Positions 307 through 46,851 are shown, counted from the first letter of the stretch. The stretch is 46,978 nt of DNA from Guillardia theta CCMP2712 (GCF_000315625.1 NW_005434420.1:1-46978); one strand, 5' to 3'. Program-made: numbers and translations. The notes: generated by a model not told the origin, from the sequence alone.

Positions 307-631
307 CGTCGTGCCTGCTGACATGTCGAGCGGATGGCTTCTGCGATAGCGTCGGGGGTGCATCCCTCCACAGCCTTGCAAGCCTGGGCTGTCCTGCTGT
401 TCGGATAACGCTTCGCGAAGCTCTTCACCCTCTCGACGAGATCAGCTTCGAGGACAGAGGCATCCACAAGTCCGCTCTGCGTGTATTGGCATGATCTCCG
501 ATACAGCATGTTGCAAACATTTTCATCATACTGAAGAAACCATACTTAGAAAGCTATTTGAAGTATACAAACCTCTCGCTTGCAGCTTCCTTGGGGCCCT
601 GGCGGCTTCCCCTACACCTGACAAGGAGCCA

Positions 632-698
632 TGCTGCCGAAAATAACGGCGCCTGCTGCCGAAAATAACGGCGCCTCCTAAACCCTAAACCCTAAACC
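632..698. repeat. 22-bp direct duplication followed by a short interstitial telomeric block
   Basis: tgctgccgaaaataacggcgcc occurs at 632-653 and 654-675; cctaaaccctaaaccctaaacc follows at 677-698. Confidence 0.9.
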
Positions 699-819
699 AG
701 CCTTGAATGGTGTTCAAGCTGCTTATCAGCCCTCACATATACAATTCTAGTCTAAAGAGGCGCGCGAGCACTGGGAGTACACGGCCTACAATGCTACCCT
801 GCTTCTGAGGTCTCGTCCT

Positions 820-1737
820 TCTTTCTACTTCTGCTGTCTTCTCTTGGCTTCCTAAGCCTCAGTCAGGAGAGTTGCCTCTCCTCACCTTGGCCTTCAGTCG
901 CCACCTACTCCTCCTCCATTCAGCTTCCTCAGCCTCAGTCAGAAGAGTTGCCTCTCCTCACCTTGGCCTTCGGTTGCCTCCCGGAGTCCTACCTTCTCTC
1001 CTTACCTTGCCTACCTTGCTGGCTCGTCGGTTGCTCTTCGACTTCGCCGTGTTGTCTTGCTTCATGCTCAGCACAGCTCAAGCCGCTCGGCCCCCGCCCT
1101 CGCCTTGCTCTTCTTCCATGTCTTCCTCTTCTTCGTCATCTTCCCTCATCTCCACCCGCAGTCGGTCCTTCTTGTCCNNNNNNNNNNNNNNNNNNNNNNN
1201 NNNNNNNNNNNNNNNNNNNNNNNNNNNNNNNNNNNNNNNNNNNNNNNNNNNNNNNNNNNNNNNNNNNNNNNNNNNNNAGGAACTTGAAGAGATCGACGCT
1301 CTATGTCGTCGCTCTCCGCCTCCTGCTCAAGCTCAGCAGCTGCCGTTGCCCGTGGCGAGAACGCGCTGCCCCTCCTTGCCTTCTTGCTCTCTCCTTGCAC
1401 GCGAGTCCAGCGCTTGCTCTGCAGCCACTTCCCCAGCTTCTCCTTGAGAACGTTGCGCCCCACTCCCTGCTCCTCTGGCGTCTTCGCCCACTCTCCCGAG
1501 TCCCAGCGACATGAACTCCAGACTCCCCCGAGAGTAGAAGGTGTCGTGGAGATTGCCAACGGCCTTGTCCAGGACCAGCTTGATCGGCTCGCTCGTCCCC
1601 GCCTCGTTCAAAGAAGCTGCATCTTCGATGACTGCTGACAGCTCGCTGACGAGCTGCATGTCCTCTTGGCTTGACGGAGATGCTGCCTCCATTGTGATCC
1701 TCTCCAGGTCTGCTGCGCCTTCGAGATAGAAGGGCAT
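820..1737 (-). pseudogene. Subtelomeric degenerate/hypothetical E/K/R-rich coding-like sequence
   Basis: Minus-strand ORF MPFYLEGAADLERITMEAASPSSQEDMQLVSELSAVIED... followed by purine-rich, coiled-coil-like sequence across the N gap; ~40-bp internal duplication (about 858-897 and 932-971) carrying stops. No recognisable domain. Confidence 0.25.
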
Positions 1738-2050
1738 GCTATCAGTGTTTAGCTTGCAGGCTTGAACACTGACGATGCAGACGGCGCAGTCACTGTCGCG
1801 CCGGCCCGGGCGGCCGGCGGGCTGAAGTCGAGTTGACTGAAAAAAACAAAAAAAAAAGTCTCGCAACAAACTTTTCCCGCGCTCTTTCAGTGCCACAAAC
1901 CTTGAACATGCGCGCATGCTCGACCTCGCACTTGATATCCCCTGTCGCATGCTTGTATCTGAGAAATTGAATGAAAACATATGTTTTTCTAACTTTGATA
2001 TATCCTGATCTGCCAGCAGAAGACATCTGAGTCGAAAATTCTTTATTCAA

Positions 2051-3660
2051 ATGAAAGCTCAATCGCACCCAGGTAATGATTTCTGATCACCGACATTGTT
2101 TTCACCTGTTTCATTCCTGGCAGTCTTGGAAAGAAAGATTTTTGTTGGAGGACTTGCACCCGACGTGACTGAAAAAGAACTACACGACCATTTCTCTGTA
2201 CTGCAAGATTCTGTATTTTGCAAATTCTGAGTTTTCCATCAACAAAAGGCATTCGGAGAGGTTGAAAAGGCTTGGATCAAAACAATCTTTCGAAGTGCAG
2301 ACATCATTCATTGATTCTCTATCTTAGCTTTGTTTGTTTGGTAGATAACAAATGGAGCTCGAGAGGGTTTGGATTCGTAGTGTTTGAGAAATCGGATACC
2401 GCAAAACACGTCGTTACTGTGACGCACGAGATAAATCATAAAGTCTGCGAAGCCAAGGAATTTTTCAAAATATCAAATCAATTCAATCCTCATTTTTGAG
2501 TTAGGTTGCTGTCCCATATCCAAGCCCTTCTTCAAAACAAGAAAATACCATTGAAGAATCACATGGCAGCCGTTCCCTGGATTCTTGCAAGGCATTTGTT
2601 TTCTGGAAATATGGCAAGTTCAACTCTTTGGAACTTTTCGAATACGCAAATGTTTGCTTTCTTCTTCAATCAAAACCATCATCTCACTATTTTTACAGAA
2701 GATTTGGGGAAGCAATGTGAGATGGGCCGAAGTTTTGAAAAATCCAGAAACAAAACGTTATCGAAGGTAAGGCATTTAATGAAGTTGTTCGGTGGCTCAC
2801 GATTGAAAAGATGTGGCTTCATCACGTTTCGATCTGAAGTTCTTGCAAGAGAAGCTATGGGGCAAAGAGTGAATAAGCTTGAAGGTAAAAGTGATTATGT
2901 CGGAACTCTATGAATCTGCGAACAGGCATGCCAGAGCTGACGCTGAAAGAAGCTTTTGAGAGGTCCTTCACCACGTTTAGGGACGTTGACGAGAACAGAT
3001 CAGCAACTTCCAGTTTTGTGTGTCAAGAGGAGGAGTATTCGACTGATGAACAATCTTGCGAATCATGCTGCTCGCAATCTTCGAAGGAATGCCAGCGAAA
3101 GAATACGGAAGACAATGCAAAAACTCAGAAAGAGGAAAACCACAAAGAGGACGGAAGGTATTTTCAATTTCTTTCGAATATCTCTGAATTGTGCTCAACT
3201 TTGGTCAACAGCTCAGACGATTCAACATATTCTGCTGGATCTTGGTAATGCTCTCTCAACCTTGCCAAATTGATTTGATGATCGCAGCGGAATTAGTTTT
3301 TCTGGATCGCTCCAAGGCCTAAACGGTTGTGGACGATTCGAACCTCTTTATTCTGAGACATCCCCTGCCCAAGACTGGACGCCAAATCGAGCTGTATCCA
3401 TGTTTCCTCAGCATTATTTCATAGCACTTGTTCCACCGTATCAGGGTGCATCGCCTATCATGCCTGACCGATCAATGCTGGCACATTCAATGCCCCTTCC
3501 ATGCATGCTCTATAGCCCACCTGCGCAGCCATTTGGTGCTTGGAGTATGCAAGATACAGGAACAGGATTATTCAACTTTGGAGATTCATCATTTGAAAGA
3601 CCTTCATGTAAAAATTTGCATTTCTGGAAAAAATATGTTGACTTTGTGAATCCAGTTTAA
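2051..3660 (+). CDS. RNA-binding protein with two RRM domains (Musashi/hnRNP A-like), multi-exon
   Basis: ATG 2051, MKAQSHP, intron, then ERKIFVGGLAPDVTEKELHDHFS (RNP2) and SRGFGFVVFEK...HEINHKVCEAK (RNP1). A divergent second RRM follows (RHLFSGNM; RCGFITFRSEVLAREAM), then a low-complexity tail; last exon open to TAA at 3658-3660. Confidence 0.8.
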
Positions 3661-37820: not shown

Positions 37821-37989
37821 CGGTAACGGGAGCGCAACGGGACTAGAGAGGCGGGCTTGTTAAAATCCACACCATTTCTTATAAACCAAAATATCCTCAC
37901 ACCCAAACAATCAATCGAACAAACCGACTTAAATTTCTTGTTGACTACTGAAGCTTCTCAAAGATCTTGTTGACCACTGCAGCTTCTCA

Positions 37990-39990
37990 TCAGACGTCAC
38001 GTGACATCCCGCGACCCTGGTCGAGATCATCGAATGCCTGCAAGACTGTCAGTTTCTGATCGCTGTGCCTTCTCCATCCTCTACCAATGCTTGCTCGACC
38101 ATCCCCTTCCTTCTTCTCATCATACCTGGCGCCAGTTGTTTGGCTGGGCTCCCCCTACACCTCCTGCAGCGCTCTGCTGCACCGGCTGAGCTGACATCCA
38201 GTTCGCTGGCGCGTTGCCGGCGTTCTCATCGATCATGCGGGGAGGAGGAGCCGACATGAAGGAGTTTGGCATGCCACCGGGCATCATCGACGTTTGCATA
38301 GGAGACATCATCATCTGGCTGGGCTGAGACATCTGAAAAAAATATCGGTGACTATCGACCCAAATTTAGCCAAGGCTCTACCTGACGCGGCGAGCTCATC
38401 TGCTGCATCGTCGCCATCTGTGACAAAAGCATGCCGAGCTGCTCCTGCGAGATAGGCGAGTTCTTTCCAGAGGATTGTTTGCCAGCCTTAGATTTCTGAC
38501 TCTGGTTGCTCTCGCCAGCTTGGTCATCGACGTCTTCGTCGTCGTCCGACATCTCTTGCGCTTCCATTTCAGCCTGCTGTCGGCGGCGGAGCTCCTGTAT
38601 CTTCCCCGTCATCCTCTCGCGCCCTCCCTCCTCGCCCCCTCCTTCTGACCCGCATCTTCTTCTTCTCCGCGTTGAAGTCTTCCATCAAGTCCGACTTCGT
38701 CACCTTCAGCTCTGACAGCTCAAGATTTGCCTTGTCCATGAGCAGCTGGAACCGAAGTAGCGCAAACCCGTCTGCACACACCCAACACGCCCCGTCAGAA
38801 ACAACTCGTCATACCCCTCCACCCTCCTACTCACACATAGACTTCGCCAGCACGTCCATCACAACGTTGATGCAATGCTCCGTCACTTGGTCGATCACCT
38901 TGGTCTTGAGCAGCAGCCACAACACCGGGTACACCATCCAGATGCAGAAGTAGGTGCTCAAGGCCGTCTGCAGTGGGTTCCTCACGTTCTTGTTGCGGAA
39001 ACCTGTCAATCACATCCCTCCGTCACGTCCCCGCCCCTCTACTCCCTCCCGCCAGATCCACCTGCTTTCGAGGCCACCGACACTCGCCGGGACTGGGTCG
39101 TGTTGCCCTTCTTGGCGAAGTACTGGATGAAGCGTACCTGCGCGCACTTGCATCAGCCACCATGTCCTGCCTCCTGCCTCCCTTCCCTACCTGCACGAGG
39201 CTAATGATGTTGAACCACGTGTAGCTGAACAGCAGCATCCCAAACGCAAACCACAGAAACCTGTACATCCCATCCTCAGCCTCCAGCCCTCAGTATCCCC
39301 TCGCCTCTCCCTTGACATACGTGGCTGGTGGTGGTGTGTTCGCAGACATGAAGCCGGTAAAGATCGTGATCTGCACGTACACCGCGTAGGTGATCTTGTA
39401 CGGCAGGTTGAGCGTAGTCAGCAAATCGAAGGTCTGCCACACTCCGTCAGCCTCACCTCCCCTCTCTTACTCTTCGTCCCTACCAGAAGAGGGCAGGTGA
39501 TGAGGTAGTCAAAGTACTTGTACAGGATGATGTTGGTCGCGGCCCCGACGTCTCCGGACAAGTGCGACGTGATTCTTGCGTACTGCGCCATCCTCCCGTC
39601 AGCTCCGTCAGCTCCGTCAGCTCCTCTGTCCTCCTCCCCATCCCTTTGCCCGCTCCCCACCACTCCGCATCGTCACTCACATATGCCACTGCCGCAAACA
39701 GATTCACGTACAGCGAGATCATCCCCTTCTCACGGTACCCTGCACGCCGTCAGCTTTCACCCCCAGCCTCCTGACCCTCATCTCGCGCCTTACCGAAGAA
39801 GTAGAGGATGTCTTTGTTGGGCGGCTTGAAGTTCATCAGCCTGTACGCCAGCACGGCCGCAGTCCCTCCCAGCGAGATGAAGCCGACCCAGTCTGCGATC
39901 AATCGGTCATGACATGGGCTTGAATGACAGCGGAGTACCAAGTGCCTGGACGACGGGGGTGCGCAAATAGGCTACCGAAGAGGTGCTCAT
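37990..39990 (-). CDS. Bacteriorhodopsin-like cation channelrhodopsin (cryptophyte BCCR, GtCCR family), copy A, 12 exons, ~440 aa
   Basis: Spliced: MSTSSVAYLRTPVVQALDWVGFISLGG...YFFGYREKGMISLYVNLFAAVAYYARITSH...LYKYFDYLITCPLLTFDLL...NLPYK...YFCIWMVYPVLW...VMDVLAKSMYGFALLRF. TM3 has D-T-D at the bacteriorhodopsin D85/T89/D96 positions, K at R82 and the xCP motif; TM7 has DxxxK with the retinal lysine. Long cytoplasmic tail ends AFDDLDQGRGMSRDV*. May be a published GtCCR, but I cannot assign the number. Confidence 0.93.
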
Positions 39991-41307
39991 GGTATGAACT
40001 CAAAGGTTCGATGAGTAGCACAATATTCTGGTCTGAGAGTTGAAAGATAGATTTTCTGTCAACCACAGCATGCTTCAGTACATTGAATCAGCGGTTGTTG
40101 TACTTGGATACTTTCTAATGCTGTACTGATTGCATCTCTTTCCTTCAGTTCCTGCTCATAGGGCTGAGATCTATTCGTTCAGGAAACAAGGTATCTTGTT
40201 GCTTCTTCTACGTTCCTCCCCATCCTCCTCCTTTTCCTTCTCCATCCTCGCCGCCTCTCTCCCTCGCAACCCTCAATATCCATTTCACAGTGAGCTCTGA
40301 TACACTCCTCAAACCCACCCCTACCCACTCTCTTGATACCCCCCATGCATTCCACCCTCCTATTCATATGGGATGACCCGGTTCTTTTAGTCCTTTGTAC
40401 CAGACAGAATCAATTCACCCCATCCCTTTGGATATCCACGAGTTTCCTCTAGTCCCCCACCCCCTTATCCCCCGCAATCTCCACCTACCCATTGCCCCAT
40501 TCTTGGGTCTATTTTAATTTCAGATACAGGATGCAGTCCCGAGGACGGGGTGGGTGAGCAGTCATTGAGGGGGTAGGGTGGGTCACACACCTAACGCAAC
40601 AACCAAGGAGGTCGATGATTTCGCTGGGGTCGGTAGAAGGGGATAGAAACGGATATGAAAATGAGTAAAGAAATTGTATGGAGAATACTACTGTAAAAAT
40701 TAATGTAAGGCATTTTGGTACTGAAAGAATTGACGAGCGAGGGGCCGTAAGAGAATGTCGGATCGGGGGTGGTAGACTATTTGGGATTTGTGGGGGTGCA
40801 CAAAGGTTGAGGAGGGGGTGGGGTCCAGAGAAAATGGGGGACTCCACCACATCCCGAGTAACCGAGCAGGAGACAACTAAAATACTTTTAAAATGGGTCT
40901 TTCTTACAATGGTTGTAGTCAAGTTTGATGGCTCTTGTTCTCATAGAGGGACGGCGGCATGGTGGCAAAAGCGGGGAAAGGGGAGACGGCAGGTACAGCC
41001 ATTAGCAGATCCGTCTCAAACATGGTCTCACTTTTAACCCCAAGATGTTCCGATGGGGATTGAAGCAGTAGATGCATCATCACAAAATTCTTGCAGGGAG
41101 CATGGGGAAACAGAAGAAAACTGATGTCTAGAAATGTCCAACTACAAGTGTACAAGTTCATGATAATTCGAACAAACGATATTGCACATGGCATTGCCAC
41201 ATGTCATATCTTCACAAGAGCTAAAACGGAAAATTAAGCAAAAGCCAAGGATCGATGCGATCACAACTATAAACAAGCCCACACAGGAGCTGCTACATAT
41301 GTCAATA

Positions 41308-43248
41308 TCACACATCACGCGACATCCCGCGACCCTGGTCGAGATCATCGAATGCCTGCAAGAATGTCAACACCATCAGTAAAATCTCAATCCCTTCAAG
41401 ATCAGCTGACCTGGCGCCAGTTGTTTGGCTGGGCTCCCCCTACACCTCCTGCAGCGCTCTGCTGCACCTGCTGAGCTGACATCCAGTTCGCTGGCGCGTT
41501 GCCGGCGTTCTCATCGATCATGCGGGGAGGAGGAGCCGACATGAAGGAGTTTGGCATGCCACCGGGCATCATCGACGCTTGAAGGGGTGAAGCTGGTTGA
41601 CCGATCGGTGCCATCTACAAGATATCGGTGACTATCGACCCAAAACTAGCCAAGGCTCTACCTGACGCGGCGAGCTCATCTGCTGCATCGTCGTCATCTG
41701 TGACAAAAGCATGCCGAGCTGCTCCTGCGAGATAGGCGAGCTAGTGCCTGAAACATGATTGCCTCCCTTGATCTGATTCTGACGACTGTTGCCATGCGCC
41801 TCCTCCTCGTCATCCGATAATTCTTCTCCTTCCATTTCAGCCTGCTGTCGGCGGCGGAGCTCCTGTATTTTCCCCGTCATCCTCTCGCACCCTCCCTCCT
41901 CGTCCCCTCCTTCTGACCCGCATCTTCTTCTTCTCCGCGTTGAAGTCTTCCATCAAGTCCGACTTCGTCACCTTCAGCTCTGACATCTCAAGGCTCGCCT
42001 TGTCCATGAGCAGCTGGAACCGAAGTAGCGCAAACCCGTCTGCACACACCCAACACGCCCCGTCAGAAACAACTCGGCATACCCCTCCATCCTCCTACTC
42101 ACACATAGACTTCGCCAGCACGTCCATCACAACGTTGATGCAATGCTCCGTCACTTGGTCGATCACCTTGGTCTTGAGCAGCAGCCACAACACCGGGTAC
42201 ACCATCCAGATGCAGAAGTAGGTGCTCAAGGCCGTCTGCAGTGGGTTCCTCACGTTCTTGTTGCGGAAACCTGTCAATCACATCCCTCCGTCACGTCCCC
42301 GCCCCTCTACTCCCTCCCGCCAGATCCACCTGCTTTCGAGGCCACCGATACTCGCCGGGACTGGGTCGTGTTGCCCTTCTTGGCGAAGTACTGGATGAAG
42401 CGTACCTGCGCGCACTCGCATCAGCCACCATGTCCTGCCTCCTGCCTCCCTTCCCTACCTGCACGAGGCTAATGATGTTGAACCACGTGTAGCTGAACAG
42501 CAGCATCCCAAACGCAAACCACAGAAACCTGTACATCCCATCCTCAGCCTCCAGCCCTCAGTATCCCCTCGCCTCTCCCTTGACATACGTGGCTGGTGGT
42601 GGTGTGTTCGCAGACATGAAGCCGGTAAAGATCGTGATCTGCACGTACACCGCGTAGGTGATCTTGTACGGCAGGTTGAGCGTAGTCAGCAAATCGAAGG
42701 TCTGCCACACTCCGTCAGCCTCACCTCCCCTCTCTTACTCTTCGTCCCTACCAGAAGAGGGCAGGTGATGAGGTAGTCAAAGTACTTGTATAAGACGATG
42801 TTGGTCGCGGCCCCGACGTCTCCGGACAAGTGCGACGTGATTCTTGCGTACTGCGCCATCCTCCCGTCAGCCCCGTCAGCTCCTCTGTCCTACTACTCCC
42901 CCCTTGCCCGCTCCCCACCACTCCGCATCGTCACTCACATATGCCACTGCCGCAAACAGATTCACGTACAGCGAGATCATCCCCTTCTCACGGTACCCTG
43001 CACGCCGTCAGCTTTCACCCCCAGCCTCCTGACCCTCATCTCGCGCCTTACCGAAGAAGTAGAGGATGTCTTTGTTGGGCGGCTTGAAGTTCATCAGCCT
43101 GTACGCCAGCACGGCCGCAGTCCCTCCCAGAGAGATGAAGCCGATCCAGTCTGCAATCAATCGGTCATGACATGGGCTTGAATGACAGCGGAGTACCAAG
43201 TGCCTGGACGACGGGGGTGCGCAAATAGGCTACCGAAGAGGTGCTCAT
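41308..43248 (-). CDS. Bacteriorhodopsin-like cation channelrhodopsin (BCCR), copy B, tandem paralog
   Basis: Same 12-exon layout and motifs as copy A. Differences in the 7TM region are WIGF vs WVGF and NIVLY vs NIILY, plus DKASLEMSE vs DKANLELSE just after TM7. The tail is more divergent but has the same terminal peptide. Confidence 0.93.
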
Positions 43249-44613
43249 GGTATGAACTCAAAGGTTCGAGGAGTCTGAGATTATGTTTGCTGTGTTCTTT
43301 GCTTTATCTGGCATGCGATTCATTAGTTTTCTCATGTTTGAGATGTTTTTTTGAAAATCACGTACGCATGCTGGTACATTCGCAGGTATCTGCTAACTTT
43401 TGCGATCAATTCTAGACTATAATCAAATAAAGGGGTCTGCGTGTGCATTGAGTTTTGACATGATTTGCTACTCAAACAATTGAAAATCAAACCACGCACT
43501 CAATCTTTCAAATTGTACTCATGTATACATTCCACTGTTATCTCCCCTTTCATTGAGTGTGCTATTTCAATCCATCCGATCGACCATCCTGCGTACTTCT
43601 TCTTTTCCTCTCTCAGTCATCCTTTGCTGCCCTTGTCTCCTCTCCGTCAACCTCCGCCATCTCCCAGACTGTCGCCGCCTTTGCCTCGCCAATATGACTC
43701 GCGGGATTCGAGGGACTCCACCCCAGGTCAACAAGTTTCCCAACAGGGTGAGAGGGTGTATAGGGAAGTGGGGTACTTCTCAGGGGAAGATGGGGGTAGG
43801 GTCATACATAGATAGGGTCATTGGGATGTGAAAATGATGACGGGGGACCAGAAATGGTGAAAGGTATCTTGAGGATCCTAGATGGTGGGTGGTCAACATC
43901 AATATCACTCACATTTGTTTCCATAGTACAAAAATTCTACAAATAATAATGAGTAAACATTGACGATAGATCAACATGGAGGTATCTAAGGCCCCCAAGG
44001 GGACGGGGTACCAAGGAAAATACCTGAAACAATGTACTGTTATGAATAGTTTTGAGTTCATGAAAAAGTATCTTTTCACTGACTGGGGGTCAGATCAATG
44101 GCCCTTTGGTACAGAACATCCCTGGTACAATTTGTACCGGGATGACGGCAGATTGGATCTCGGGGGGTCATGTTCAGGGGCTGCAAAAAGGGGCAGGTCG
44201 TCAGATACGGTCGTATCTCAGGGACGGAACGGTCCATGTCACACTGCAGTGGAAACGAGCGTTTCCGTATCGACTGTTCTAAAACGTTTTACTCCTCTCT
44301 GTTGCTACTGGATTTACGGCCCCTCAAATAGCACGGGAGCCCTAGTAGCCTACAACGCCTATGGCGAGATCGGTAGCTGGTTACATGTAATTTTATCATA
44401 TATTATTGATTTCTAAAAATGAATGTAAGGGCGGTTACACTCTGGCTACATGGTAGTAACGGATACTTCAGTCTCGTACAACAAATGTCTGGTACATCCC
44501 CGGGGCCCGAAGGGAGAAAAAAAAAGGTCAAACTCGAACAACAAGACAACGGGTCAACATCATCAAGTCTGCTGTGGAAGAGAGTGTGTGTGGTGGTGGT
44601 GTTCCTTCAGAAG

Positions 44614-46851
44614 ATGGCGCGAGGAGCGCTTGCAAGCCTCGTCGCCCTCTGTCTGCTGGGCTCGAGCTCGAGTGTGAGCTCGTCCTACACGCTCAACGAT
44701 GGGACAGGGAGGACGAGCGATGGTAACATCCTGTACATGTGGGGGAGGAACAACGTTGCGCAACTCGGGGTTGTCTCATGCGTGCAAGACACAAGGTTCT
44801 TCACCTTCTCGTGCCTCCCTGATACAGTCGACCGGTCGACACCCTCTGCTTGCCCGCTGCTGGGATACTCCAAGGTTCTGAATGCCAGTCTGGGCAACAC
44901 CGTCTCCTTCGTGCTGCTTGCCGATGGCAGCGTGTACTCATGGGGGGAGGGGCAGTACTTGGGAGTGGAGACAAGCGAGCTGTACACCGGGGTACCGAAC
45001 CTCGTGGATGGACTAGCGGGAACGAGGAGGATTGAAGTCGGTTACACGAGCACACTCGCATCCTTTGCTCCTCGCCAGGGGAACATCATCGAGTACGATG
45101 ACTTCCAGAACTTTCACAGCGACTTCAGGTCGGGGCCGTCAGCTTCGATCTTGTTTCGGACTCCTCTCCTGACTTCCTGTCTTCAGCTTCGTTGGGGATG
45201 CACAGCCCTCGTTCTCGCCTCCTCTTGACTGCCCAAGATGCGTTGCATGGGAGAAGTCGAAAGCTCAGCCTGTAGGGTTTGCACCCATCACAGGGTACAA
45301 GTGTCAGGCTCCACTATGGGGAACTCTATCCAACCCCTGGTGTGCGAGTCATAAGTGAGTTTGTCTTCCTCACAGGATGGCAGGTGCTACGTCGGGAGCT
45401 TTGCTTCGGCTCCTTGCAAGAATGCCATACAGGCGGGTCCCGTGCCGGTACGCCATGGGAGGCAGGAGGGAGATGGGGGCTAATGCCGGGGGCAGGGTGA
45501 GCCCGGGATGTTCTATTTCCTCACAGAGTGCGTTGACAACGGCAGAGTCCATCTCACTCCCTATCCCCCGGAGCCGAACAAGAGAGGGTTCGTTAAGGAG
45601 AGACGAGCAGGGGAGCGACGGCTGAGGCTGCTTCAGATGCCTGTGGTACAACCGGCCTGTAGAGGTCTTCTCTGCTTTCACCTCCACGTTCCGCTTCGAG
45701 ATCGAGGTCTTTTATTCCTGTCCCCTACTGCCCGTCCTTACTGCCGGCCTTGCCCAGGGCTCGGAGCTCGACGCAACGCATGGAGGAGGAGACGGCATTG
45801 CCTTTGTAATGCAGAACGAGGGACCAACAGCATTGGGAGGGAGCGGCAATGTGTGAAGCTCCTTCCCAACACTCTTGGTGTATGTGCTCATGACCGATAC
45901 GTAGGATCTTGGGGTAGCAAAGAGTGACAGATACAGCTTCACTCGAGGTTGTAGACGTTTTTGTTCTCATCCCTTGCCAGTTTTTCCGTTCCTTTGTACT
46001 TCTCCCTCCCTCCCTCCCTCCCTCCCTTCCTCTCTCCCTCCCTCTCTCCCTCCCTCTCTCCCTCCCTCTCTCCCTCCCTCCCCCGTTGAGAAGAAAACCT
46101 CGTTTTACTTACTCGCACCAGTCAACAAGATACAGTTGTCTGACTTATTTCGTCTCTCCGCAGGCATACACGATGCTGCTGCATTTGAAATTCGAACTTT
46201 CGACGAGCCAGGGTCACACATGAACTTTTATCATACCTCATCCATGTTTTCCTTTTGAATTGCATTGCTCCTGTGCTATGTTTCCAAACTTTCTCATCAT
46301 CAACATCATTGTTCTTCTTCTCCTCCTCCTCCTACACCAACACCACAACTCCTTCCACTGTTACCTCCTCCTACTGTTACCCTGCCTTCATCCCCCTTGC
46401 CTATCCTTCCCTCCCGTGTCGCGGACCCGCATGTCTGCCATCTCTCTACTTGAGACTAACCAGCATCCCTTCCTCACTCCTGCTTCTGCAGTCTTGTCAT
46501 CAGGGCATGCGGAGCGGGGAAGGCGTACGTGAGAGACGTGGGAGCTGGTCCTGATTGTTCTGCTCGGCTGTTGACCAAGACAGCAGACGAACGTGTCCTG
46601 TGTGAAAGCAAGAACAGACTTCAACGTGCAGGAGACGTCAATTTCTACTTTCAGTACTCCTCCTCCTCCTCTAGCATTACCACCAACTCTTCTACCTCAG
46701 CCCAACGCTCTCCTCACACTACATCACCTCCCTGGCCCCTCCTCTACCTTCCATCATCTGTACCTACTCCTCCTCCCCCCCCTCTCCTCCTCCTCCTCTA
46801 GAATCGCCTTTCCCTACATCTCCGACACCACAACTTCCTCCACACCACCTT

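What the first reader, a model, noticed from the sequence alone, without database searches (positions are those of the whole stretch)
37990..43248. Tandem pair of DTD-motif (pump-like) cation channelrhodopsins hidden by 11 introns each
Seen: no track ORF shows the protein, but splicing gives two ~440-aa type I rhodopsins with KYFDYLITCPLLTFD (TM3), GYRE before TM2 and DVLAK (TM7). Established: cryptophyte BCCRs (GtCCR1-4, ChRmine) are light-gated cation channels that keep the bacteriorhodopsin D85/T89/D96 motif and are valued optogenetic tools. Inference: at least one copy may be an uncharacterised natural variant. Near-identical 7TM cores with different tails and promoters suggest separate targeting or expression.
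Basis: partly seen in the sequence, partly recalled or inferred. Interest (0 to 1): 0.75.

Follow-up and report, generated by a model that had tools for sequence, protein, structure and literature searches.

The report
Untested tandem cryptophyte channelrhodopsin-like genes
Two intact, intron-rich neighbouring genes of the alga Guillardia theta encode close relatives of the light-gated cation channels GtCCR4 and ChRmine; both are already annotated and catalogued but untested, and the public gene models carry a likely splicing error in the key helix.

Summary
On the minus strand, 37990-39990 and 41308-43248 each carry 12 exons and 11 GT-AG introns. They encode 441-aa and 436-aa type I rhodopsins with K-Y-F-D...T-C-P-L-L-T-F-D (the DTD motif), GYRE before TM2 and DVLAK in TM7.

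The window is Guillardia theta CCMP2712. The genes are GUITHDRAFT_148915 and GUITHDRAFT_148916 (XP_005819002, XP_005819003), named "hypothetical protein". Konno et al. 2020 list them among 42 rhodopsin-like genes. They are none of GtCCR1-5, and I found no functional data.

The nearest solved proteins are GtCCR4 (E 7.6e-65, 44% identity), GtCCR2 and ChRmine.

New here:
- Both RefSeq models keep 27 intron bases as coding, which inserts VGTKSKRGE into helix C inside the DTD motif.
- The genes belong to a well-supported subclade with a 35-47-residue cytoplasmic TM5-TM6 loop carrying a conserved RRxS-type motif. Its only tested member I could identify (G1CCR) gave no photocurrent.
- The pair is an old duplication (tail dS about 0.29) whose 7TM core was later homogenised (dS 0.03).

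Channel activity is therefore inferred, not shown. The scan had already noted other BCCR genes elsewhere in this genome (GtCCR2 and a mis-annotated GtCCR1/2-type gene), but not this locus.

The parts
37990..39990 (-). Copy A = GUITHDRAFT_148915 (XP_005819002.1 / EKX32022.1 / UniProt L1I7F9). CDS from ATG to stop, 12 exons, 441 aa in the corrected model (450 aa in RefSeq).
41308..43248 (-). Copy B = GUITHDRAFT_148916 (XP_005819003.1 / EKX32023.1 / UniProt L1I6Y7). CDS from ATG to stop, 12 exons, 436 aa in the corrected model (445 aa in RefSeq).
39939..39990 (-). A exon 1 (start codon; conserved YLRTPVVQAL N-terminus)
   Evidence: Homologues share the Y-L-x-[ST]-P-[IV]-V-Q pattern.
39794..39892 (-). 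A exon 2 (TM1)
39681..39739 (-). A exon 3 (GYREKGM and TM2)
39484..39582 (-). A exon 4: first half of TM3, with K92 (BR R82 position), D95 (BR D85) and T99 (BR T89)
39457..39483 (-). A: 27 nt of intron 4 that RefSeq treats as coding (VGTKSKRGE). I read this as a mis-splice, because it leaves a 23-nt intron.
39321..39433 (-). A exon 5: TFD(106)LL, which holds the BR D96 equivalent, then LNLPYK and TM4
39191..39260 (-). A exon 6 (TM5)
39062..39137 (-). A exon 7: extended cytoplasmic TM5-TM6 loop with R181-R182-V-S184
38835..39002 (-). A exon 8: TM6 and TM7 with W211, Y214, P215, D239 (BR D212) and K243 (BR K216, Schiff base)
38650..38771 (-). A exon 9: conserved post-TM7 helix (YGFALLRFQLL...LKVTK...KKKMR)
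38382..38594 (-). A exon 10: acidic and Ser/Gln-rich tail, the most divergent part between the copies
38126..38332 (-). A exon 11: Met/Pro/Gln-rich tail ending NNWRQ
37990..38037 (-). A exon 12 (AFDDLDQGRGMSRDV and stop). It is predicted only. If intron 11 is retained, the protein ends WRQV.
43197..43248 (-). B exon 1
43052..43150 (-). B exon 2 (V20I relative to A)
42939..42997 (-). B exon 3
42752..42850 (-). B exon 4 (I89V relative to A; K-Y-F-D...T-C-P-L-L)
42725..42751 (-). B: the same 27 intron bases that RefSeq treats as coding
42589..42701 (-). B exon 5
42459..42528 (-). B exon 6
42330..42405 (-). B exon 7 (loop with RRVS)
42103..42270 (-). B exon 8 (TM6-TM7, DVLAK)
41918..42039 (-). B exon 9 (N/S and L/M differences from A)
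41662..41862 (-). B exon 10 (12 nt shorter than in A, in frame)
41411..41614 (-). B exon 11 (3 nt shorter than in A, in frame)
41308..41355 (-). B exon 12. Its protein is identical to A's, with 3 synonymous differences.
40017..41306 (.). Unique spacer between the copies, which contains copy A's promoter region. It has no similarity to the sequence upstream of copy B and gives no Pfam hit.

Best explanation
The locus holds two intact tandem paralogues of Guillardia theta, GUITHDRAFT_148915 and GUITHDRAFT_148916. They encode retinal-binding type I rhodopsins of the bacteriorhodopsin-like cation channelrhodopsin (BCCR) lineage.

Shown here:
- A 7TM rhodopsin fold.
- The Schiff-base Lys (K243) with its D239 partner.
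- An intact DTD triad (D95, T99, D106), with Lys at the BR-R82 position as in GtCCR4.
- Closest homology to proven channels (GtCCR4, then GtCCR2, then ChRmine).

Inferred: after retinal photoisomerisation and proton transfer from the Schiff base to the D85-type acceptor, the protein most likely opens a passive, inwardly rectifying monovalent-cation pathway within each protomer, as its relatives do.

The two copies differ mainly in their disordered cytoplasmic tails and have unrelated upstream DNA, so they probably differ in regulation or localisation and not in photochemistry.

Two lineage-specific features may modulate function. One is an extended cytoplasmic TM5-TM6 loop with a conserved basophilic-kinase-type site (RRVS184). 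The other is a conserved W-R-x C-terminal motif.

The public gene models are wrong at one splice donor and insert 9 residues into helix C. A construct built from them would probably be non-functional.
For: Gene structure:
- 12 exons and 11 GT-AG introns, a consistent frame and no stops in either copy.

Family:
- Pfam Bac_rhodopsin matches exon 8 alone (25.5 bits) and the RefSeq proteins (46.5 bits).
- The PDB sequence search with the RefSeq protein gives GtCCR4 at 7.6e-65, GtCCR2 at 2.9e-39 and ChRmine at 2e-22, then HcCCR and the KCRs. No pump appears among the 14 hits.
- Exon-by-exon searches agree.
- Foldseek on the AF2 model ranks GtCCR4 first (44% identity, TM-score 0.72), then GtCCR2 and ChRmine.

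DTD columns:
- They are as marked in Fig S1 of PMC7175095.

Mis-splice:
- All 10 homologues whose TM3 was read in the long-loop clade, most of them from transcript-sized contigs or MMETSP transcriptome clusters, and GtCCR4, GtCCR2 and ChRmine lack the 9-residue insert.
- The RefSeq intron would be 23 nt, against 46-98 nt for the other 21 introns.
- AF2 gives pLDDT below 50 for residues 101-114.

Both copies are under constraint:
- Core dN/dS is 0.20, tail dN/dS is 0.49, the tail indels are in frame, and exon 12 has 3 synonymous and 0 non-synonymous differences.

Identity:
-.
- The genes are not GtCCR1-5.
Against: - No photocurrent, spectrum or retinal binding has been measured for either protein or for any DTD member of their subclade.
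- The only tested protein that I could place in the long-loop subclade, G1CCR, gave no current in HEK293 cells. It has Thr at the D96 position.
- Nine of 19 BCCR homologues tested in that study were silent.
- Expression is unproven. Neither gene is among the 25 quantified by RT-qPCR in PMC7714340. Their 90%-identity protein clusters contain only the genome-derived model.
- Exon 12 and the exact C-terminus are predictions.
Confidence: 0.6

Rival explanations
1. The proteins are BCCR-lineage rhodopsins that are not ion channels. They would be photosensory or regulatory rhodopsins, or electrically silent ones, that signal through the extended cytoplasmic TM5-TM6 loop and the long tail.
For: - The long-loop clade is separated from the proven short-loop channels with 100/99 support.
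- Its only tested member, G1CCR, was non-electrogenic.
- A conserved [KR][KRH]xS motif lies in the cytoplasmic loop next to helix F, the helix that moves in the photocycle. It is present in 13 of 14 sequences.
- About half of the tested BCCR homologues are silent.
Against: - G1CCR lacks the D96-type carboxylate. PMC7175095 reports that neutralising this residue abolishes channel activity in GtCCR1 and GtCCR2. These two genes keep it.
- The 7TM is 44% identical to GtCCR4 and keeps the family signatures GYRE, LNLPYK and AKSxYGFALL.
- Silence in a heterologous cell often reflects poor trafficking and does not prove lack of function.
Confidence: 0.25
2. The proteins are outward light-driven proton pumps, as the DTD motif would suggest in archaea.
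For: - The DTD triad, the D212 and K216 equivalents and the retinal-pocket W/Y/P residues are all conserved.
- Pumps such as cyanorhodopsin, archaerhodopsin and BR are the next-best structural matches.
Against: - Every one of the 14 sequence hits in the PDB is a channelrhodopsin of the BCCR/KCR group, and pumps are absent at E of 1e-5 or below.
- Lys replaces the BR R82 arginine.
- Every tested cryptophyte DTD rhodopsin of this lineage that gave a current conducted passively.
Confidence: 0.05
3. One or both copies are unexpressed, decaying duplicates, or the pair is an assembly artefact made of two alleles.
For: - Neither gene is in the RT-qPCR set of PMC7714340.
- No transcript-derived protein clusters with them.
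- The 7TM cores are nearly identical.
Against: - Both ORFs are intact across 12 exons with canonical splice sites.
- The indels are in frame and dN/dS is below 1 in both core and tail.
- Synonymous divergence is about nine times higher in the tail than in the core, a mosaic that alleles would not show.
- The flanks are unrelated and the sequence between the copies is continuous without Ns.
- No third copy exists elsewhere in the assembly.
Confidence: 0.07

Closest known systems
GtCCR4 (Guillardia theta Gt_164280, GenBank MF039475, PDB 8YEL) and its near-twin GtCCR5 (Gt_164579)
   Same: They come from the same organism and the same BCCR lineage. They share the DTD motif, Lys at the BR-R82 position, GYRE before TM2, LNLPYK after TM3 and AKSxYGFALL after the Schiff-base Lys. 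GtCCR4 is the best PDB hit (E 7.6e-65) and is 44% identical over the 7TM.
   Different: - GtCCR4/5 lie in a different, well-supported subclade.
- The TM5-TM6 loop stretch is 17 residues in a GtCCR4-like homologue (P0033) against 35 here, and that homologue has no RRxS motif. GtCCR4 itself aligns with an 18-residue gap at this loop.
- The tail is unrelated.
- GtCCR4/5 are patch-clamped light-gated cation channels. These two genes are untested.
GtCCR1/GtCCR2 (PDB 8YEJ) and ChRmine/RlCCR1 (PDB 7W9W, 7SFK)
   Same: They are BCCR-family DTD rhodopsins with proven passive cation conductance. They are the second and third best matches (2.9e-39 and 2e-22).
   Different: Identity is only 32% and 23-25%. 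They belong to other BCCR subfamilies as described in PMC7175095.
G1CCR (Geminigera sp., GenBank MN585294)
   Same: It is the only tested BCCR homologue with the long TM5-TM6 loop and the KRxS motif. It resembles P0020, P0024 and P0026 in the same major clade.
   Different: It has Thr at the BR-D96 position (DTT) and gave no photocurrent in HEK293 cells.
Gt_135937 (G. theta, contig C17) and its Hanusia-like transcript orthologue P0002
   Same: This is the closest paralogue. It is 85% identical in exon 8, P0002 is 62-65% identical overall, and it has the same loop, motif and exon layout.
   Different: It is a single copy and its tail runs on after WRS without a terminal intron. Its public model is truncated before TM7. 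It is untested.
Bacteriorhodopsin (Halobacterium salinarum)
   Same: It shares the DTD triad, the D212/K216 pair and the 7TM fold (TM-score about 0.7).
   Different: Identity is about 18%. BR has Arg, not Lys, at position 82. BR is an outward proton pump without a cytoplasmic tail.

Membership tests
Microbial (type I) rhodopsin, Pfam PF01036 | 7TM Bac_rhodopsin domain scoring above the curated cut-off | tested here: met
   Exon 8 alone scores 25.5 bits against a cut-off of 24.6. The RefSeq proteins score 46.5 and 46.7 bits. The AF2 model has 7 helices and is fold-matched to rhodopsins.
Microbial (type I) rhodopsin, Pfam PF01036 | Schiff-base lysine in TM7 (BR K216) with the D212-type aspartate four residues before it | tested here: met
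   The motif D239-V-L-A-K243 is in exon 8 of both copies. These columns are invariant across 24 homologues (D248 and K252 in RefSeq numbering).
Bacteriorhodopsin-like cation channelrhodopsins (BCCR) | DTD motif in TM3 (BR D85, T89, D96) | tested here: met
   D95, T99 and D106 are present in the corrected splice. They align to the D, T and D of GtCCR4 and ChRmine and to the marked columns of Fig S1 in PMC7175095. In the RefSeq models the triad is interrupted by 9 extra residues.
Bacteriorhodopsin-like cation channelrhodopsins (BCCR) | Closer in sequence to proven BCCRs than to pumps or to chlorophyte channelrhodopsins | tested here: met
   All 14 PDB hits at E of 1e-5 or below are BCCRs or the related HcCCR, KCRs and BlChR2. 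The top hits are GtCCR4, GtCCR2 and ChRmine.
Bacteriorhodopsin-like cation channelrhodopsins (BCCR) | Light-gated passive cation conductance | not testable with these tools
   This needs patch-clamp recording of the corrected constructs. No published data were found. The only tested member of the subclade was silent.
Bacteriorhodopsin-like cation channelrhodopsins (BCCR) | Trimeric assembly, as in ChRmine | not tested
   Only a monomer was modelled.
GtCCR4/GtCCR5 subfamily | Groups with GtCCR4-like sequences in a tree and has a short TM5-TM6 loop | tested here: not met
   A branch with 100/99 support separates the long-loop clade, which includes both genes, from the GtCCR4-like, PsuCCR2 and RaCCR4 clade. 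The loop stretch is 35 residues against 17.
Light-driven proton pumps of the BR type | Arg at BR position 82 together with DTD, and closest relatives that are pumps | tested here: not met
   Lys (K92) occupies the R82 position. No pump appears among the significant sequence hits.

The most novel reading that the evidence does not exclude
The long-loop clade comprises Gt_148915, Gt_148916, Gt_135937, their Hanusia and environmental relatives, and the DTT group. It could be a functionally distinct BCCR subfamily. Its gating, trafficking or signalling might be controlled through the extended cytoplasmic TM5-TM6 loop, for example by phosphorylation of the conserved RRxS serine, and through the W-R-x C-terminus. 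Its conductance properties might differ from those of GtCCR4 and ChRmine. It may have escaped characterisation partly because the G. theta gene models are mis-spliced or truncated.
Probability: 0.2. Interest if true: 0.6.

Novelty: new member of a known kind. Interest (0 to 1): 0.35.

Why it matters
BCCRs such as ChRmine and GtCCR4 are among the most light-sensitive optogenetic actuators, so untested natural variants have practical value.

The useful result here is not the existence of the genes, which are annotated and catalogued. It is three other points:
- The public protein sequences carry a 9-residue artefact inside helix C. A construct synthesised from them would probably fail.
- The genes belong to a distinct subclade in which no DTD member has been tested.
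- The pair offers a natural comparison of two nearly identical photoreceptor cores with different tails and promoters.

If the corrected proteins conduct, they add a new branch of BCCRs with a possible phospho-regulated loop. If they do not, they help to mark where channel function ends within this lineage.

Tried and rejected
- **Pfam on single exons.** Only exon 8 reaches the rhodopsin model. The other exons are too short, so a blank there means nothing.
- **Splice enumeration script.** My first script used wrong frame anchors for exons 4 and 10-12 and returned nothing for introns 4, 10 and 11. I fixed this by direct reading.
- **Alternative intron 9 acceptor.** An acceptor giving a 36-nt intron was rejected because it runs into a stop. 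The homologues read KKKxR directly followed by ELRRR-type sequence.
- **Papers not held.** Govorunova 2016, Yamauchi 2017 and Sineshchekov 2017 are not held. Any mention of these two genes in them could not be checked.
- **S4 Fig of PMC7714340.** It shows which 29 genes were amplified by RT-PCR but is held only as an image, so it could not be read.
- **The joined spliced model.** I did not search or fold it, because it has no reference. All searches used single exons by reference or the database proteins P0039 and P0040 (the RefSeq models, with 9 extra residues).
- **Retention of intron 11.** This would give C-termini WRQV and WRQVS, like the W-R-x ends of the relatives. I considered it but did not adopt it. 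Exon 12 with its acceptor is a 94%-identical island between unalignable sequence, and it differs only at synonymous sites.


Full report
**What is there**

Three-frame translation of the minus strand shows two series of short coding pieces that repeat about 3.26 kb apart. I placed the splice sites by frame continuity, GT-AG ends and homologues.

- Each copy has 12 exons and 11 introns. The introns are 46-98 nt long and all are GT-AG.
- Copy A runs from its ATG at 39990 to the last stop base at 37990 and encodes 441 aa.
- Copy B runs from 43248 to 41308 and encodes 436 aa.
- The longest exon is 213 nt. No ORF of 90 aa or more lies on the coding strand.
- A six-frame Pfam scan of the whole 87.1-Mb assembly finds 50 rhodopsin matches, but none on this contig.

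**Handling of the spliced model**

The joined spliced model has no reference, so I did not search or fold it. All searches used single exons by reference, or the database proteins P0039 and P0040. Frame, split codons, exon identities and dN/dS were computed exon by exon.

**Identity of the genes**

- Exon 8 used as a query against the representative library returned a family of full-length relatives.
- A word search with one of them (P0002) then returned two NCBI proteins encoded on a 46,978-nt contig. These are GUITHDRAFT_148915 (450 aa; XP_005819002.1, EKX32022.1, UniProt L1I7F9) and GUITHDRAFT_148916 (445 aa; XP_005819003.1, EKX32023.1, L1I6Y7). Both come from Guillardia theta CCMP2712 and both are named "hypothetical" or "uncharacterized".
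- Both appear as Gt_148915 and Gt_148916 in the catalogue of 42 rhodopsin-like genes by Konno et al. 2020 (PMC7714340). They are in its S1 sequence dataset and its RT-PCR primer table, but not among the 25 genes it quantified.
- The five proven G. theta cation channelrhodopsins are GtCCR1 = Gt_120390, GtCCR2 = Gt_99928, GtCCR3 = Gt_162755, GtCCR4 = Gt_164280 and GtCCR5 = Gt_164579 (PMC10172181). Neither gene here is one of them.
- A full-text search for their identifiers finds only the Konno paper.

**Family**

- Exon 8 alone passes the Pfam rhodopsin cut-off.
- Against solved structures, single exons and the RefSeq protein all hit GtCCR4 best (7.6e-65), then GtCCR2 (2.9e-39) and ChRmine (2e-22), then HcCCR and the KCRs. 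No pump is among the significant hits.
- An AF2 model of the RefSeq protein has seven helices. It matches GtCCR4 at 44% identity and TM-score 0.72, followed by GtCCR2 and ChRmine.

Key residues in corrected numbering:

| Residue | BR equivalent or role |
|---|---|
| K92 | R82 position (GtCCR4 also has Lys) |
| D95 | D85 |
| T99 | T89 |
| D106 | D96 |
| W211, Y214, P215 | TM6 retinal pocket |
| D239 | D212 |
| K243 | K216, Schiff base |

**A splicing error in the public models**

- P0039 and P0040 equal my models except for nine extra residues, VGTKSKRGE, between ...ITCPLL and TFDLL....
- These residues come from keeping the first 27 bases of intron 4 as coding, which leaves an intron of only 23 nt. 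The other 21 introns of the two genes are 46-98 nt.
- The donor I use, GTAGGG, is the same hexamer as the donor of intron 6.
- All 10 homologues whose TM3 was read in the long-loop clade, most of them from transcript-sized contigs or MMETSP transcriptome clusters, lack the insert. So do GtCCR4, GtCCR2 and ChRmine, whose alignments open a 9-residue gap exactly there.
- AF2 ends helix C at residue 102 and gives pLDDT below 50 for residues 101-114.

The insert sits between the T89 and D96 equivalents, so a construct synthesised from the RefSeq sequence would probably be defective.

**A distinct subclade**

A maximum-likelihood tree of 21 relatives splits with 100/99 support into two clades.

- The short-loop clade holds a GtCCR4-like sequence, P0048 and P0034. 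By comparison with the published alignment, P0048 is PsuCCR2 (functional) and P0034 is RaCCR4 (silent).
- The long-loop clade holds both genes, the Hanusia-like orthologue of Gt_135937, seven environmental or transcriptome sequences, and a DTT group.

In the long-loop clade, the stretch from RFxQYF to VRNPL is 35-47 residues, against 17 in a GtCCR4-like homologue (P0033). GtCCR4 itself aligns with an 18-residue gap there. That stretch carries [KR][KRH]xS[IVMLF][AS] in 13 of 14 sequences; here it is R181-R182-V-S184. Standard rhodopsin topology places the E-F loop in the cytoplasm. A basophilic-kinase site is therefore a reasonable but untested reading.

Most DTD members end W-R-[SD] plus 0-3 residues. 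The two genes read NNWRQ at the end of exon 11.

Among the 19 BCCR homologues tested by Sineshchekov et al. 2020, only G1CCR has this loop. It has Thr at the D96 position and gave no current. No DTD member of this clade has been tested in the literature I could read.

**The duplication**

- The shared block is 37989-40016 against 41307-43274, at 94.8% identity. This is the CDS plus 26 nt of leader.
- DNA on either side is unrelated, and there are no Ns.
- Exons 1-9 differ at 4 residues (V/I, I/V, N/S, L/M). Their introns differ by 1.9%.
- The core has dS 0.031 and dN 0.006.
- Exons 10-11 have dS 0.285 and dN 0.140, with in-frame length differences of 12 and 3 nt.
- Exon 12 has three differences, all synonymous.

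I read this as an old duplication whose 7TM part was homogenised later by gene conversion, with both copies under purifying selection. It does not look like two alleles or an assembly artefact.

The promoters are unrelated. The tails are homologous with divergent patches and an identical last exon.

**What remains open**

- *Function.* I put a light-gated cation channel at about 0.6, a silent or sensory rhodopsin at 0.25, a pump at 0.05, and dead genes or an artefact at 0.07.
- *Expression.* I found no transcript-derived protein in the clusters, and the RT-PCR gel of Konno et al. is held only as an image.
- *C-terminus.* Without intron 11 splicing, the proteins would end WRQV and WRQVS, like their relatives. 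Against that, exon 12 with its acceptor is a conserved island with only synonymous changes.

**Context**

- The nearest paralogue is Gt_135937 on contig C17, 85% identical in exon 8.
- GtCCR4 and its twin lie on C56 and C64, 49% identical in exon 8.
- Upstream of copy B, on the other strand, lies an RCC1-repeat ORF.
- Other agents of this scan reported GtCCR2 and a mis-annotated GtCCR1/2-type gene elsewhere in this genome, but not this locus.

**Verdict**

This is a correct and careful first reading of a real feature. The feature is a new, untested member pair of a known family, already present in annotation and in a published catalogue. What this check adds is the corrected splice, the subclade placement and the duplication history.

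Noticed in passing
L033 (G000:C17:986788-989952), about 583-2355 (+): Gt_135937 appears truncated after TM6 in the S1 dataset of PMC7714340, so it lacks the retinal lysine there. The genomic locus nevertheless holds the TM7 exon (MDVLAKS) and a full tail ending QDWRSSIMFTPE. Its 'no-lysine rhodopsin' status therefore looks like a truncated gene model.
   Followed up: partly
window 39062-39137 and 42330-42405 (-); proteins P0002, P0005, P0020, P0024, P0026 and P0041-P0047: The extended cytoplasmic TM5-TM6 loop carries a conserved [KR][KRH]xS[IVMLF][AS] motif (RRVS here) in 13 of 14 long-loop BCCR relatives. It may be a kinase site.
   Followed up: partly
window 38126-38140 and 41411-41425 (-); C-termini of P0004 and P0041-P0047: Relatives end W-R-[SD] plus 0-3 residues. 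In both copies here, an in-frame stop follows WRQ by 1-2 codons if intron 11 is not spliced, so the true C-terminus is uncertain.
   Followed up: partly
proteins P0001 and P0052 (ENA metagenome contigs of 1.1-1.4 kb): Environmental contigs encode the exon-8 peptide at 100% identity, but their intron read-through differs from both copies. This points to Guillardia-like relatives in nature.
   Followed up: no
window 44419-45228 (+): An ORF with RCC1 repeats (PF00415, PF13540) lies upstream of copy B and is oriented divergently from it.
   Followed up: no
G000:C56:487926-488078 and G000:C64:469804-469956 (-): Two loci encode the same GtCCR4-type TM6-TM7 exon, each scoring 95.9 bits against PDB 8YEL. 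This fits GtCCR4 and its near-twin GtCCR5 being a dispersed duplicate pair.
   Followed up: partly
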